Of a DNA stretch of 64,000 nucleotides, positions 54,184-62,925 are shown piece by piece. This DNA is from Octopus bimaculoides (lineage: Eukaryota). The stretch spans positions 50,154,852-50,218,851 of the forward strand of contig NC_068995.1 of the NCBI RefSeq assembly GCF_001194135.2, written 5' to 3'. The notes below the pieces were generated by a model. It was not told the DNA's origin, did no database searches, and saw nothing but the letters and a program-made list of their open reading frames with translations. Numbering within the stretch: position 1 is the first letter of the stretch; the number at the start of each line of letters is the position of its first letter. The translations under genes and the position numbers were made by a program.

Positions 54184-54283
54184 AATAAATTGATGCTTGC
54201 AGTTATTATGTTGCATCTTGTTTCTGTAATTTAAATTTTGGTTTTATCTAATTTCAGGTTGTAGGAGATAGAATATTTCCAAC

Positions 54284-54381
54284 ATGACCCTTGGTATTGT
54301 AGCTGCACTGACTGCTGCCAGCACAATTGCAGCAATTAACTTCGTCTTTGTCATTGCTATTATTGTTTGGAGATGTAAACG
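54284..54381 (+). CDS. Unknown single-pass membrane protein, transmembrane exon
   Basis: Acceptor atttcag|54258; ATG at 54284; MTLGIVAALTAASTIAAINFVFVIAIIVWRCK(R) is a long hydrophobic helix followed by Cys and basic residues; donor CG|gtaaat, phase 2. Confidence 0.75.
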
Positions 54382-55577
54382 GTAAATATAATTTATATCA
54401 CTTTGTCACTGTGTCAACTAGGTTATCAGATGTGGTTATACACCGCTAGTCACAATACACTTTCTCACATTATTATAGCTTTTGAATGATGTCACTCTGT
54501 GGCCAACATTATCTCTGAAAGGAAGGTCAGCGCATTTCAGGGTTACTTGCTTACAGCTTACTGGACTGGAGCTGTGTGAAATGAAGTGTTTGGCTTAAGA
54601 ACACAATGCACTACTGGTCTGAGAATTGAAACCATGATCTTGTGATTGTGAATGCAACACCCTAGCCACCCTAGCAGTGTCATTCGTTTCCAGTCTTCTA
54701 CAAAAACATGTCTGGTTGTAGGAAGATGTTGCCTTGCTTAGAAACAAGTGAGCGCTAGTGACAGGAAAGGCATCCAACTGTAGTAAATCTGCCTCAACGA
54801 ATTCTGTCTAACCCATGCAAGTAAGGAAAAGTGAATATTAGAACAATGATGATGATGATGATATTGATGGTGATGACATAGGCTGTATATTATGCTGGAA
54901 GCATAATCATGAAAATATTAAAGTTTCAACTTATGTTGACTTTTATATGAAGCTGTGTGGAATGACAACATTCCTAATTGTGGTTAAGATTGCAGCATAA
55001 CATGTTCAATACATTAACACTTCTGCCTACCAAACCACTATAATAATGATGATAATGATACTGGTGGTGGTGATGGAATTTTCCTTTAAACTTTTAAGTA
55101 TGGTTACTCCAGATGCAGCACAGAATTTTGTCAGTGAACAGGTCGCGGTCTCAAAGCGACGAAAATATTTTGACAAATTAAATTTAAATGTTGAAGTGAA
55201 TCTAACGGTTTTTGTGTGTTATTTTAAATGGCTTATAAACACCTTCTACGCTGCAGATGTTAACTATCTTATAAAGAAAAAAAAAGAAAAAATAGAATCG
55301 GTATTTTCTGCAAGTCACATTGCCTTAATAAACTTGACATATCTAAACAGAAAATAGCTTCAAACATGACTTTCCTCAACAAAAGAGAGACTGGTATATA
55401 AAATTGCTTTCTGTAGTTAAAGATTATCAAGTTCTAAGTGGATATATTTGATTTGTGCAGTAAAAGGGTTAATTTTTAGCCTAATCTTTTCTGGATTGTC
55501 ACACATTTAATTTCAAACTGTTTTTTTTCCTTCATCAATTTATTCTTATATTTATTTTTTCCTTTCATCAACAACAG

Positions 55578-55873
55578 ATGGAAAAAATCAAAGCCTGTTC
55601 CAGTAACATCACTGTCATCCCAACCAACTATTCTCAAAAGAAAACCTATAAATATCAGCAGATTAGATCTGAATCCACAAAACTTTGCTGGGCAGCAAAA
55701 TCCTGTCTATACAGTGCCAACTGTAATACAAACAGTTCCAAGCAGAAATCCAATTTCATATGAGAGGCAATCAAACAGGCCCCCTAACAAAGTTTGGCCA
55801 CCTCTTGGTCAGTTTTTAACGATGAATGATTCAGTTATGTGGTATCCAGTTGAGAATGCTACTGTTGTCCCTG
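55578..55873 (+). CDS. Unknown membrane protein, cytoplasmic exon
   Basis: acaacag|a WKKSKPVPVTSLSSQPTILKRKP...NPVYTVP...ISYERQSNRPPNKVWPPLG...MWYPVENATVVP g|gtaagt; 98 stop-free codons in AT-rich DNA, phase 2/1, matching the previous donor. Confidence 0.75.
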
Positions 55874-56932
55874 GTAAGTAAGATAACGTAATTTTGATTG
55901 ATTGGTTCAATCGTATTTCCTGTGATTACTCAGTCATTACATAGTTGAGATAAAATAGTTTCTTTGGTTCCTTAGTTTGGTTTAACCATTATGACTAAAG
56001 CTGTACTGAAATGTTGATGGAGCGGAGAATATTTGGGGTGTATTTTTGTTATTTGTAAGCTAGTTAGAAGGGGAGGGAGCAGGCAGTACTCATGGCTATT
56101 GCAGGACTTCCCGGCCTGGTGAGATTGATGCATTCAATGTTTGGCATCAACATTTTGTAGGTCAATGTTTGCAAGAAGAGCATGTGTGAAGAAGGAATTC
56201 CAAGTGATTGCCATCCTGGGGAAGGAAGAGAGAATTTGGCGAAGTGTTTGGTGAGGCTTCTTAAAAGTTAAAAGTTAGACACAATGGTGGAGAGAGGAAC
56301 ATAAATAGTTGAGTTGGGTGAGCTTGCATGGCAAGGGTGTGTGTGTGTGGTAAGGGTGAGCTTGTATGGCAATGGTATGCAGTTACCTAACTTACAAGTG
56401 TGATGATGGGACCACCATTGCCACATGTGTGAAGTAGATTGCAAAATACAGTAATATAAGACAGTCTCCATTGGTCAAAAGCTAATCATGTATCTGGACG
56501 TGTATACCCAAGTCTAGCAAGACTTTTATATGCTTTGAGTTCTACAGTTTTGAATTAATATATAAATGTGTGTGTGTGTGAGTGTATGTACATATGTGTG
56601 TGTGTGTATATATATATATTTCGAAACGTCTAGTTAGAATAGAGACAGCTAATGAAGGGATATTCCAAGTGGCTTTCCGTTTTCCATGTGTTCGTTCCGT
56701 TGTCTGTAGTTCATTGTTCTAACGTCCTGTGCCCTGATATGCATATATATACACATGTAGATGTATGTACATATGTGTGTATACATGTATATATACATGT
56801 ATATATATTCTTTGTATATATATATATGCACACACACATACACACATTCTAAAAGTGGTGTTAACAACCTGGTTAATTATAATTTGCTGTTTCTTTGTAT
56901 TATGTTTATTTTTTATTTTATTTTTTTTCCAG

Positions 56933-56948
56933 CCAGACAACAAGCTCA
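56933..56948 (+). CDS. 16-nt micro-exon
   Basis: Long poly-T tract ...ttttttttccag|CCAGACAACAAGCTCA|gtaagt; phase 1/2. Confidence 0.65.
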
Positions 56949-57295
56949 GTAAGTAATATCTTCATATATTTGTCTGTCATTTATTCTATAGCTTTTTTGT
57001 CTGCAACTGTTGTTAGAAGGTGTGTAGTATGTGATGAAATTTATTATCTATTTTTTTTTTCTCATTTTTGTTAATAAATTGGACAATGGAGTACAAATGT
57101 GTATTGATGGCCTTTCCTGTTCCTTAAAGACTAGTGAGATGGATATGGCCTGGGCATCTGTGGATAAATGTTTGCAAGATGGATGCAAGTAAGGAGGGAT
57201 CTGGGGATCTACTAGTCAGGTTTTACTCACACAGTGTCAACATGAAGACATGTTGCAACACCCACACACACATACACACTCACGTCTGTGTGTGA

Positions 57296-57330
<35 letters not shown>

Positions 57331-57823
57331 NNNNNNNNNNTGGGCTAGATGGTTTAACCGGGCTGGCATGCTGGAAGGCTGCGCCAGGCTCCAGTCTAGT
57401 TTGGCATGGTTTTCTACAGCTGGATGCCCTTTCTAATGTCGACCACTCTGAGAGTGTAATAGACACTTTTACATTCCACCAGCATGGGTGCCAATTTGCG
57501 TGACACCAGTGCTAAAATTTGAAACCAATATTATATATCTTGTAAGTGGGGAGCTGGCAAAATGGCTAGTACGTTGGGTAAGTGGTATTTCGTCCAACTT
57601 TATGTTCTGAGTTTATATTCTGCCAAAGTAGACTTTGCCCTTCATCCTTTTCAGGATCAATAAATGAATACCAGCTGAATACTTAGGTTGATGTGAATGA
57701 CTTATCCCCTCCCTTGGCATTGCTGGCCTTGTGCCAAAATTTGAAATTAATGTTACATATTTTGACTTTCATTAAAACAATTACTAAACAGTTTTTTTCT
57801 TTTTTTCTTTTTAACTCTTTCAG

Positions 57824-57830
57824 GAACTCA
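57824..57830 (+). CDS. 7-nt micro-exon
   Basis: actaaac branch-like motif, then gtttttttctttttttctttttaactctttcag|GAACTCA|gtgagt; phase 2/0. Confidence 0.65.
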
Positions 57831-61739: not shown

Positions 61740-62260
61740 CCCTTCTGGTTATCTGATACAGTTCCATGCTACCCCAACTCTTTTGGGCCTTCCAGGCCTN
61801 NNNNNNNNNGATTTGGCATGGTTTTCTACAGCTGGATGTCCTTCCTAACACCAACCACTTTGAGAGCGTAATGTGTGCTTATACCTGTCTCCTAGCTTCC
61901 CTTCTGGCTATCTGATACAGTTCCATGCTACCCCAACTCTTTTGGGCCTTCCAGGCCTGTTTCCTCGCTCTAACAGCCCTGTCTACGGTATTGTTCCACC
62001 ACCACATTATCCTAGGTCTGGAAGGGACTTTGCACCAGCCACAGATTTGGTCTGTGGCACTCAGCAAGCTATCCCACAGGAATTCCCAGTTGCCCACTAT
62101 GTCACAAGTTTGTAGCTGCTCCTCTCTCTCATCAAATTTCTCAATTAGGATGTCCCTAAATCTCTGACCATATGAAAGGTCCTTAAGCTTTCAAATCCTT
62201 TTCCATATTGGTCTGCTTCTTGACATTGTTCTGGCCTGGAGACTAAAGTTGCTAATATAT
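61740..62260 (-). mobile_element. RTE LINE ORF fragment
   Basis: DQICGWCKVPSRPRIMWWWNNTVDRAVRARKQAWKA...ELYQIARREARRQV. Confidence 0.7.
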
Positions 62261-62451
62261 ACTCTGCTGAGTGGTTGGGGTTAGGAAGGGCATCCAGCTG
62301 TAAAAATCCTGCCAAAACTGCCACAGAAATCTGGTGCAGGCTTTGGCCTGGCCAGCTCTTGTGAAACCATCCCACTCATGCTAGCATGGAAGGCAGACTT
62401 TAAATGATGATGATGCTAATGGTATAAGAAAAAGAATTCATATTGTTACAG

Positions 62452-62477
62452 AATTATTCTGGTGTTGTCTACAGAAA
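62452..62477 (+). CDS. Candidate 26-nt exon
   Basis: catattgttacag|NYSGVVYR aa|gtaatt; supplies the phase 0 to 2 shift the next exon needs; weaker donor. Confidence 0.4.
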
Positions 62478-62551
62478 GTAATTTTATTGGTAAAAATGTG
62501 AAGAACATTAGAGCACATTTCCTTGGCAAATTTCAGATTATCGTTTTTCAG

Positions 62552-62643
62552 CCTTCAACCATATTCCATTCTCTGCAAAAAGAAATATTTGCCCTCCTAT
62601 CTTAAGAGGAACCTAGAAAGAGAATTACCAGGAAATAAAGTCA
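62552..62643 (+). CDS. Candidate 92-nt exon
   Basis: cgtttttcag|c LQPYSILCKKKYLPSYLKRNLERELPGNKV a|gtaagc; only phase 2 is open; an in-frame alternative acceptor exists at 62537. Confidence 0.55.
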
Positions 62644-62736
62644 GTAAGCATTGAGATATTTCAATTGCTGATGAATGATGAAGTGTAACAATCAATATCA
62701 TGCGACTAATTAATGATACCTTTTAAAAAATTTCAG

Positions 62737-62749
62737 ATTCAGTCAAAAG
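62737..62749 (+). CDS. Candidate 13-nt micro-exon
   Basis: gactaat branch-like motif ~26 nt upstream, tttcag|ATTCAGTCAAAAG|gtaaaa. Confidence 0.45.
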
Positions 62750-62882
62750 GTAAAATCTTCTAATTTTTATAACAGTTACAAAAACTCATTTATAAGTGAA
62801 GAATTCTTACCTTGTCCAATGAAAATTTAGATTTCAAATAGTCAAAGTCATCACACAACACTTAAAATTCACTTTACTTCAG

Positions 62883-62925
62883 AAGATGCATTAACACTTC
62901 AAATGTCGATTTCCTATATCCCCAG
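62883..62925 (+). CDS. Candidate 43-nt exon
   Basis: actttacttcag|...ccccag|gtgagt (tandem CAGAAG acceptor). Open in phase 2 (RCINTSNVDFLYPQ) and phase 1 (DALTLQMSISYIP); phase 0 is closed. Confidence 0.5.

What the first reader, a model, noticed from the sequence alone, without database searches (positions are those of the whole stretch)
54258..62925. Unrecognised single-pass membrane protein built like a transmembrane adaptor
The model reads: almost no ectodomain; hydrophobic helix MTLGIV...IAIIV; juxtamembrane WRCKRWKKSK (a Cys next to the TM is a typical palmitoylation position); then a Pro/Ser-rich, probably disordered tail. The tail has many Tyr motifs: VYTVP, ISYER, WYPV, EYLK, DYDDD, NYSGV, VVYRNL (fits ITIM [ILVS]xYxx[LV] and Grb2-type YxN), YSIL, SYLK and LYPQ. 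This layout matches vertebrate transmembrane adaptors (LAT, PAG, SIT, LAX), which are not well described in molluscs. I recognise no catalytic domain. The ORF track misses the protein entirely. The function is inferred, and motifs after 62452 depend on the lower-confidence exons.
Basis: partly seen in the sequence, partly recalled or inferred. Interest (0 to 1): 0.72.

Follow-up and report, generated by a model that had tools for sequence, protein, structure and literature searches.

The report
Small cephalopod-only membrane protein, over-extended model
The first five exons encode a real but already catalogued 169-residue octopus membrane protein of unknown function found only in cephalopods, while the last four exons, which carried the signalling motifs, are chance constructs on the opposite strand of a neighbouring cytochrome P450 gene.

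Summary
The window is Octopus bimaculoides chromosome CM046615.1. Only exons 1-5 (54284-58111) are real. They are the annotated gene LOC106870792, "uncharacterized protein", 169 aa, ending ...DYDDDVCY* at 58111. O. sinensis keeps every splice site, including the 16-nt and 7-nt microexons, with dN/dS about 0.44. The only relatives among 1.84 billion proteins are cephalopod: an O. vulgaris fragment, Argonauta hians, and a 167-aa transcript from two SRA runs that ends at the same place. Exons 6-9 (62452-62925) are false. Exon 7 lies antisense to the last coding exon of a convergent minus-strand cytochrome P450 (62538-62612). Exon 6 lies over that gene's poly(A) signal, and exons 8-9 lie in its last intron. 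About 8,800 equally valid 4-exon chains exist there by chance. All ITIM, Grb2-type YxN and YxxPhi motifs came from these false exons. The real protein has a tiny N-terminus, one membrane helix, a conserved juxtamembrane W-x-C and a disordered Pro-rich tail. Only one Tyr motif (VYxΦP) is conserved. No Pfam or PDB family matches. The three gaps lie in an intron or in intergenic DNA. The layout resembles a transmembrane adaptor, but that function is unproven.

The parts
54258..54381 (+). Exon 1 of LOC106870792. It starts after an AG acceptor. The CDS starts at ATG 54284 and encodes M-TLGIVAALTAASTIAAINFVFVIAIIVW-RCK(R), i.e. the TM helix plus the start of the basic juxtamembrane stretch.
   Evidence: in-frame TAG at 54269-54271. 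97% identical in O. sinensis with the same donor. The exon 1 / exon 2 split is the same in Argonauta.
55578..55873 (+). Exon 2 (296 nt), the main part of the cytoplasmic tail. It includes the conserved VYTVP block and the WYPVEN block.
56933..56948 (+). Exon 3, a 16-nt microexon.
   Evidence: Present in the 169-aa and X1 models. Length and splice sites are conserved in O. sinensis.
57824..57830 (+). Exon 4, a 7-nt microexon (GAACTCA). It is needed to put exon 5 in the conserved frame. The current RefSeq isoforms X1 and X2 lack it.
   Evidence: The frame it restores aligns with the C-terminus of the distant orthologue (3 of 5000 shuffles reach the score).
58019..58111 (+). Exon 5, the terminal coding exon: KERPEYLKRQRDPGFGSVEILPDYDDDVCY, stop TGA at 58109-58111.
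   Evidence: The orthologous transcript ends 5 residues after the conserved LP.
58995..59000 (+). First AATAAA downstream of the stop. It is a possible poly(A) signal, but it lies inside the mariner-like remnant, so it is uncertain.
   Evidence: Not verified by transcripts.
57331..57340 (.). Assembly gap inside intron 3. It interrupts no exon.
60147..60802 (.). Assembly gap in intergenic DNA between the two convergent genes, flanked by (TA)n / (CA)n microsatellites.
61800..61809 (.). Assembly gap in intergenic DNA, flanked by a 149-nt direct duplication that is 98% identical (61651-61799 and 61810-61958). These are probably unmerged contig ends in a SINE-like repeat.
62538..62612 (-). Last coding exon of a convergent cytochrome P450 gene (VPLKIGGQIFLFAENGIWLKAEKR*). 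It is NOT part of the finding's gene.
   Evidence: called gene, PF00067, CDS end = window 62538.. (PF00067, E 1.5e-17, on the last two exons joined).
62452..62925 (+). They lie over the P450 poly(A) signal (TTTATT at 62483), its last coding exon and its last intron.
   Evidence: No counterpart in any annotated isoform or orthologue.
63968..64000 (-). 3' part of the haem-binding exon of the P450 (…PFGFGPRMCIGQKMA…KSPETE). It continues beyond the window end.

Best explanation
**Shown**
- 54284-58111 (+) is a real five-exon protein-coding gene, O. bimaculoides LOC106870792.
- Its conserved product is 169 aa: M1, a 27-residue hydrophobic helix, a strongly basic juxtamembrane stretch with an invariant V-W-x-C, and about 135 residues of Pro-rich tail predicted to be disordered.
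- The protein stops at 58111.
- The gene belongs to a small family seen only in cephalopods.

**Inferred**
- The charge difference across the helix is 0 to +1 on the N side and +6 on the C side. This predicts a type III signal-anchor, with the N-terminus outside and the tail in the cytoplasm.
- The invariant Cys31 would sit at the inner membrane face, where S-acylation is plausible.
- The tail most likely works as a membrane-tethered carrier of short linear motifs. The conserved ones are VYxΦP (a YxxP-type site, the class preferred by Crk/Nck/Abl SH2 domains once phosphorylated), W(R/Y)PxEN and RQRxPxxGSxxxLP.
- The protein would thus recruit or regulate cytosolic partners at a membrane.

**Confidence**
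- Gene structure, protein end and rejection of exons 6-9: about 0.9.
- Cytoplasmic motif-scaffold function: about 0.3.
For: - **Gene identity:** the window is 100% identical to GCA_001194135.2 CM046615.1. Exons 1-5 translate exactly to XP_014772478.1 / A0A0L8HHQ4.
- **O. sinensis orthologue:** 169 aa, with identical exon lengths and splice sites. There are 12 synonymous and 18 non-synonymous differences, giving pN/pS of 0.44.
- **Exhaustive HMMER search of 1.84 billion representatives:** only four hits, all cephalopod where the source is known.
  - One is an intron-free 167-aa transcript assembled independently from SRR24189498 and SRR27666080.
  - The tail-only alignment to that transcript beats 2000 of 2000 shuffles. 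The exon-5 frame aligns to its C-terminus, with 3 of 5000 shuffles reaching the score.
- **Invariant columns:** S13, I15, A16, V28, W29, C31, V76, Y77, P80 and others.
- **Structure:** AlphaFold2 gives one helix at 3-37 and pLDDT below 50 elsewhere. There is a single hydropathy peak.
- **P450:** the called gene has PF00067 and its CDS ends at window 62538. The C-terminal exon and the Cys-pocket exon were read directly. PF00067 scores E 1.5e-17.
- **Chance chains:** 8,795 frame-consistent 4-exon chains exist downstream of 58099.
- **Motif scan:** every ITIM and YxxPhi match, and the only YxN match in O. bimaculoides, lies in the rejected exons.
Against: - No transcript of O. bimaculoides itself was available. 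The current RefSeq models for this assembly (X1 143 aa, X2 135 aa) omit the 7-nt exon, so the 169-aa form rests on older models, O. sinensis and cross-species conservation.
- The O. vulgaris gene model uses the GT after DYDND as a donor and splices to a further exon. That exon is found in O. sinensis at L002:27663-27749 but not in this window. Alternative 3' ends therefore cannot be excluded.
- Topology, acylation and Tyr phosphorylation are untested.
- An N-x-S/T sequon at EN(A/D/K)(T/S) is kept in 3 of 4 species. It would only matter if the tail were luminal.
- The Argonauta model lacks the C-terminal block.
- The species behind the two SRA runs is unknown.
Confidence: 0.7

Rival explanations
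1. The protein is at least 224 aa and continues through 62452-62925 and beyond the window. Its tail carries ITIM-like (VVYRNL), Grb2-type (YRN) and YxxPhi motifs, making it a LAT/PAG/SIT/LAX-type multi-tyrosine adaptor.
For: The nine exons keep one open frame with AG/GT borders.
Against: - Exon 7 is antisense to the P450 terminal coding exon. Exon 6 lies over the P450 poly(A) signal. Exons 8-9 lie in its last intron.
- There are 8,795 alternative chains by chance.
- Every public isoform and the distant orthologous transcript end at exon 5.
- No homologue of the extra 58 residues was found.
Confidence: 0.03
2. The protein is a small accessory or regulatory subunit. It would bind a channel, transporter or receptor through its TM helix, in the manner of FXYD, KCNE, RAMP or Nav-beta subunits. 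The tail would be secondary.
For: - The TM helix carries invariant small and polar residues (S13, I15, A16; the 'AAS-IA' face) across about 31%-identical orthologues.
- The only database matches, all sub-threshold, are to TM plus juxtamembrane segments of such single-pass proteins: syndecan-2, RAMP2, Nav beta-2 and an FXYD-like protein.
Against: - Those matches have E of 0.01 to 2 and are driven by hydrophobic composition. None reaches a curated cut-off.
- The tail also holds conserved blocks and is homologous on its own, so it is under selection too.
Confidence: 0.2
3. The topology is the opposite, or the N-terminal hydrophobic segment is a signal peptide. The Pro-rich part would then be extracellular or luminal and N-glycosylated, forming a small mucin-like or secreted product.
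For: There are three N-x-S/T sequons in the tail, and one (EN-x-S/T) is kept in 3 of 4 species.
Against: - There are six Lys/Arg within 10 residues C-terminal of the helix and none N-terminal of it. The positive-inside rule is established knowledge.
- A 27-residue hydrophobic stretch modelled as one long helix is too long for a signal-peptide core.
- There are no Cys pairs and no folded ectodomain.
Confidence: 0.07
4. The protein is an endocytic or sorting cargo or adaptor that acts through an LDL-receptor-type NPxY signal (NPVY at 74-77).
For: O. bimaculoides and O. sinensis read QQNPVYTVP. NPxY is the classic PTB-domain and clathrin-adaptor signal (established knowledge).
Against: The N and P are not conserved: DTVY in the SRA-run orthologue and QEVY in Argonauta. 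Only V-Y-x-Φ-P is invariant.
Confidence: 0.05
5. This is not a functional protein: a lineage-specific transcript with a fortuitous ORF.
For: There is no known domain. The current RefSeq isoforms disagree about the C-terminus. The tail evolves fast.
Against: - The ORF, the exon structure and the microexon frame are kept between Octopus species.
- Protein-level homology to a distant cephalopod transcript has E 6e-9 in a library of 1.8 billion.
- pN/pS is 0.44.
Confidence: 0.05

Closest known systems
Vertebrate transmembrane adaptor proteins (TRAPs: LAT, NTAL/LAT2, PAG/Cbp, LIME, SIT, LAX, PRR7). This is a functional class, not one homologous family.
   Same: - Extracellular part of only a few residues, a single TM helix and a Cys at the cytoplasmic membrane border.
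- A tail with no enzymatic or folded domain, rich in Pro, carrying Tyr-containing short motifs (class features per PMC3342071; features here).
   Different: - No sequence similarity to any of them. Pfam returned no LAT, PAG, SIT or LAX model even at E of 10 or less.
- One Cys instead of CxxC.
- Only one conserved Tyr, against 9-10 in LAT or PAG.
- No ITIM, ITAM or YxxM in any orthologue. YxN appears only as lone, non-aligned matches in O. sinensis (YDN) and the SRA-run transcript (YSN).
- Shorter (169 aa).
- Tyr phosphorylation and SH2 recruitment are untested.
Single-pass accessory subunits (FXYD/phospholemman, RAMP, Nav beta-2) and the syndecan TM-plus-juxtamembrane segment
   Same: A small bitopic protein whose best, sub-threshold, database matches are to their TM helix plus basic juxtamembrane stretch. 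The TM helix has a conserved small-residue face.
   Different: - All matches fall below the curated cut-offs (best: Syndecan E 0.01, Cadherin_C_2 E 0.014).
- Those proteins have real ectodomains or signature motifs (FXYD; syndecan C1/C2 with a C-terminal EFYA), which are absent here.
Public records of the same gene: XP_014772478.1 / UniProt A0A0L8HHQ4 (O. bimaculoides) and XP_029646630.1 (O. sinensis), named 'uncharacterized protein'
   Different: - The public models stop at VCY* (58111) and carry no functional annotation.
- The current isoforms X1 and X2 skip one or both microexons and truncate the tail.

Membership tests
Transmembrane adaptor proteins (TRAP class: LAT/NTAL/PAG/LIME/SIT/LAX) | Very short extracellular part and a single TM helix | tested here: met
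   The ATG is 1 residue before the hydrophobic stretch and an in-frame stop lies upstream. There is one hydropathy peak and one helix at 3-37. The orientation is inferred from the charge distribution and was not measured.
Transmembrane adaptor proteins (TRAP class: LAT/NTAL/PAG/LIME/SIT/LAX) | Juxtamembrane CxxC palmitoylation motif (present in LAT, NTAL, PAG, LIME; absent in LAX, SIT) | tested here: not met
   Only one Cys (W-R-C-K) is present, with no CxxC. That Cys is invariant in all orthologues. Acylation itself cannot be tested here.
Transmembrane adaptor proteins (TRAP class: LAT/NTAL/PAG/LIME/SIT/LAX) | Cytoplasmic tail without enzymatic or folded domains | tested here: met
   No Pfam domain. 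AlphaFold2 pLDDT is below 50 for residues 48-167.
Transmembrane adaptor proteins (TRAP class: LAT/NTAL/PAG/LIME/SIT/LAX) | Several conserved tyrosine motifs of SH2-binding type (YxN, ITIM, YxxM, and so on) | tested here: not met
   The genuine O. bimaculoides protein has 6 Tyr, with no ITIM, ITAM, YxN, YxxM or YxxPhi. Only Y77 (VYxΦP) is invariant. The ITIM and YxN matches lie in the rejected exons.
Transmembrane adaptor proteins (TRAP class: LAT/NTAL/PAG/LIME/SIT/LAX) | Tyr phosphorylation by Src/Syk-family kinases and recruitment of SH2 proteins | not testable with these tools
   Needs biochemistry.
Transmembrane adaptor proteins (TRAP class: LAT/NTAL/PAG/LIME/SIT/LAX) | Sequence homology to a named TRAP family | tested here: not met
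   hmmscan against Pfam-A at E of 10 or less, and the PDB profile search, return no TRAP. The exhaustive HMMER search returns cephalopod proteins only.
   The protein ends at 58111 in all models and in the distant orthologue. The next gene is a convergent P450.
Syndecan (PF01034) / protocadherin cytoplasmic region Cadherin_C_2 (PF16492) | Score above the Pfam gathering threshold | tested here: not met
   Bit scores are 13.1 against a cut-off of 25.2, and 16.5 against 31.5. The matches cover only the TM and juxtamembrane segment.
   PF00067 scores E 1.5e-17, 64 bits against a cut-off of 22.8. The signature FGFGPRMCIG was read at window 63958-64173. The called 516-aa product has PF00067.

The most novel reading that the evidence does not exclude
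The family would be an independently evolved, cephalopod-specific transmembrane adaptor. It would be S-acylated at the invariant juxtamembrane Cys. Its single invariant VYxΦP site would be tyrosine-phosphorylated and would dock a Crk/Nck/Abl-type SH2 protein. That would make it a minimal invertebrate counterpart of LAT/PAG-type scaffolds. Correct function would depend on inclusion of a 7-nt microexon.
Probability: 0.12. Interest if true: 0.55.

Novelty: new member of a known kind. Interest (0 to 1): 0.22.

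Why it matters
- If the adaptor-like reading were right, this would be a rare example of a TRAP-style membrane scaffold outside vertebrates, restricted to cephalopods. That would interest people who study the evolution of phosphotyrosine signalling and cephalopod-specific genes.
- As it stands, this is an ordinary lineage-restricted, uncharacterised small membrane protein that is already in public databases.
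- The practical results concern annotation:
  - The conserved product needs a 16-nt and a 7-nt microexon.
  - The current RefSeq isoforms X1 and X2 skip these microexons, so they probably under-represent the real protein.

Tried and rejected
- **Pfam:** hmmscan of the 169-aa and 224-aa models, and of all five family members, gave only sub-threshold matches driven by the TM helix.
- **PDB:** the profile search gave E of 0.036 or worse.
- **Protein searches:** the word-indexed search with the single sequence and with the family profile gave no relatives beyond those from the exhaustive HMMER search.
- **Exact-product look-up of the 169-aa protein:** not on record, so no O. bimaculoides transcript contig was obtained.
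- **Literature:** searches for the LOC, XP and UniProt identifiers and for both SRA run numbers returned nothing. 'Transmembrane adaptor' plus 'cephalopod' gave one irrelevant survey.
not locatable. The orthologous locus L002 ends before the P450 region.
- **Exon-5-like block (RQRxPxxGS…LP) in Argonauta:** not found in the genomic locus.
- **Extra 3' exon of the O. vulgaris model:** present in O. sinensis, absent from this window.
- **Fold search of the AlphaFold model:** not run, because 118 of 169 residues have pLDDT below 50 and matches would be meaningless.
- **NPxY endocytic-signal idea:** rejected as a family feature because N and P are not conserved.

Full report
**Source and model check.** The window is 100% identical, gaps included, to Octopus bimaculoides assembly GCA_001194135.2, chromosome CM046615.1 (window position = L001 position + 44283). 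The description is therefore accurate as a reading of the letters. The question is which exons are real.

**Exons 1-5 are a real, already annotated gene.**
- A search of 5.8 billion proteins returned one cluster, at 100% identity over the first 166 residues.
- Its members are XP_014772478.1 / UniProt A0A0L8HHQ4 'uncharacterized protein LOC106870792' (169 aa), the O. sinensis orthologue XP_029646630.1 (169 aa), and two newer O. bimaculoides isoforms, X1 (143 aa) and X2 (135 aa).
- The 169-aa protein is exons 1-5 (54284-54381, 55578-55873, 56933-56948, 57824-57830, 58019-58111). The GT at 58100 is read through to VCY and a TGA at 58109-58111.
- X1 skips the 7-nt exon. X2 skips both microexons. 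Both then hit early stops in exon 5.
- An in-frame TAG lies 15 nt upstream of the ATG, so there is no hidden ectodomain.

**Gaps.**
- Gap 57331-57340 lies in intron 3.
- Gaps 60147-60802 and 61800-61809 lie downstream of the stop codon, in intergenic DNA.
- None touches an exon.
- O. sinensis has continuous sequence there, with the same five exon lengths, the same splice sites and an open frame.

**The gene is coding and conserved.**
- Between the two Octopus species there are 12 synonymous and 18 non-synonymous differences, giving pS 0.104, pN 0.046 and a ratio of 0.44.
- An exhaustive HMMER scan of 1.84 billion representative proteins found only four proteins at E of 0.001 or less:
  - the query itself;
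  - an O. vulgaris fragment;
  - a 138-aa Argonauta hians protein (E 4e-5);
  - a 167-aa protein (E 6e-9, 31% identity over residues 1-162).
- The 167-aa protein is encoded on intron-free contigs of about 1 kb, assembled independently from two SRA runs, SRR24189498 and SRR27666080.
- A profile of the family found nothing more.
- The Argonauta locus has the same exon 1 / exon 2 split.
- Without the TM helix, the tails still align better than 2000 of 2000 shuffles. The exon-5 peptide in the 169-aa frame aligns to the C-terminus of the 167-aa transcript (RQRxPxxGSxxxLP), with 3 of 5000 shuffles reaching the score.
- That transcript ends five residues after the conserved LP.
- Two things follow. 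The frame that needs both microexons (16 + 7 nt) is the conserved one. The protein ends about where the 169-aa model ends.

**Exons 6-9 are false.**
- The gene caller places a 516-aa cytochrome P450 (PF00067) on the minus strand, with its CDS ending at window 62538.
- Read directly, the minus strand gives the terminal exon VPLKIGGQIFLFAENGIWLKAEKR* at 62538-62612. Upstream it gives the haem-binding exon …PFGFGPRMCIGQKMA…KSPETE, which ends at 63968. Joined, the two score PF00067 at E 1.5e-17.
- Exon 6 (62452-62477) sits next to the P450 poly(A) signal (TTTATT at 62483 on the + strand).
- Exons 8 and 9 lie in the last P450 intron.
- With loose but canonical splice rules, there are 53 open AG…GT segments of 7-120 nt between 58112 and 64000. 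These give 8,795 frame-consistent four-exon chains, so such a chain is expected by chance.
- No public isoform or orthologue contains these residues.

**What is left of the motif argument.**
- The genuine protein has six Tyr in 169 residues (3.6%).
- A regular-expression scan finds no ITIM, ITSM, ITAM, YxxM or YxxPhi in any orthologue. O. bimaculoides has no YxN either. O. sinensis (YDN) and the SRA-run transcript (YSN) each have one, at positions that do not align.
- Across the family only Y77 is invariant, inside the block V-Y-x-Φ-P (VYTVP / VYAVP / VYVLP).
- WYPV is WRPI in O. sinensis and WRPK in the SRA-run transcript.
- The NP of NPVY is not conserved.
- Other conserved blocks are the TM positions S13, I15 and A16, the border V28-W29-x-C31, W(R/Y)PxEN, and RQRxPxxGSxxxLP.

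**Architecture.**
- There is one hydropathy peak, at residues 2-28.
- AlphaFold2, run on the five-sequence alignment, gives one helix at 3-37 with high confidence and pLDDT below 50 for nearly all the rest.
- Six Lys/Arg follow the helix and none precede it. By the positive-inside rule (established knowledge), the N-terminus is outside and the tail is cytoplasmic. This is inferred, not shown.
- Pfam and PDB give only sub-threshold matches to the TM-plus-juxtamembrane parts of syndecan, protocadherin, RAMP2, Nav beta-2 and an FXYD-like protein.

**Interpretation.**
- The layout matches the class description of transmembrane adaptor proteins: a short extracellular part, one TM helix, a tail without enzymatic activity that carries motifs, and often a juxtamembrane CxxC (PMC3342071).
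- Three class features fail here. There is no CxxC, there are not several conserved SH2-type Tyr motifs, and there is no homology to any named member.
- My best reading is a cephalopod-restricted, membrane-anchored carrier of short linear motifs. It has a probable acylation site and at most one phosphotyrosine docking site. That site is of the YxxP type, the class preferred by Crk/Nck/Abl SH2 domains (my own knowledge, not tested here).
- I put about 0.3 on this function.
- The main rival (about 0.2) is a TM-mediated accessory subunit of some membrane complex.
- Opposite topology, an NPxY sorting role and a non-functional ORF are each unlikely, for the reasons given under the rival explanations.

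**Verdict.**
The TM protein is real. The tail extension and most motifs are not.
- The gene is already in public databases as uncharacterised, so the novelty is modest. It is a new, small, lineage-restricted member of the general kind 'bitopic proteins with disordered cytoplasmic tails'.
- The useful by-products are a corrected gene end, the explanation of the false exons, and evidence that the microexon-containing 169-aa isoform is the conserved product, rather than the X1 and X2 models.

Noticed in passing
window 62538-64000 (-), continuing to about window 68040 (L001:18255-23757): A convergent cytochrome P450 gene (516-aa product, PF00067) has its stop codon about 4.4 kb from the stop of LOC106870792. 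Its C-terminus, VPLKIGGQIFLFAENGIWLKAEKR, resembles the C-terminus of CYP3-clan enzymes. That resemblance is from memory and was not tested.
   Followed up: partly
window 56933-56948 and 57824-57830: The conserved reading frame needs two consecutive microexons, of 16 nt and 7 nt. The current RefSeq isoforms X1 and X2 for this assembly skip one or both and end in early stops. This is likely a microexon-alignment problem in the annotation, or real alternative splicing that truncates the tail.
   Followed up: partly
window ~58920-60080 (-): A decayed Tc1/mariner-type transposon lies just downstream of the gene. Its 74-nt terminal inverted arms are at 58919-58992 and 60009-60082 (73% complementary). 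A broken transposase frame contains …HGDNSPCHQS…LLHPSYLPDLAPADFHLF… (DDE_3, E 4e-4, below the Pfam cut-off).
   Followed up: partly
window 61651-61799 and 61810-61958: A 149-nt direct duplication, 98% identical, lies on either side of the 10-N gap at 61800-61809, inside a SINE-like repeat. Copies of that repeat also occur at about 50886-51138 and elsewhere. It looks like unmerged overlapping contig ends rather than biology.
   Followed up: partly
window 61882-62190 (-): An open frame of 103 codons (…CGWCKVPSRPRIMWWWNNTVDRAVRARKQAWKA…) looks like a fragment of a non-LTR retrotransposon ORF2 lying between the two genes. This was judged by eye only.
   Followed up: no
window 31448-31873, 35485-35892, 36771-36995 (-): These are exons of an Integrator complex subunit 14 (INTS14) gene on the minus strand. 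An open frame at 36771-36995 contains MPTIILLDCSLSM…; by eye this looks like the INTS14 N-terminus (not tested). There are also VWA_2 (E 3e-4, below the Pfam cut-off) and IntS14_b-barrel (E 6e-6, above the cut-off) matches. It is the upstream neighbour of the finding's gene, in divergent orientation, about 17 kb away.
   Followed up: partly
L002:27663-27749 (O. sinensis): The O. vulgaris gene model CAI9733868.1 splices the GT after DYDND to an extra exon (TFRIHKIFFLTLKILIKESQPLMTGYG). That exon exists 7.6 kb downstream in O. sinensis but has no counterpart in the O. bimaculoides window. It could be an alternative 3' exon in that species pair or a prediction artefact.
   Followed up: partly
window 7533-8420 (+) and 33311-33547 (-): Further transposon-like open frames occur in the window. 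One, at 33311-33547, has …IFQQDNAPSHQ…, a Tc1/mariner-type DDE motif. They were not examined.
   Followed up: no
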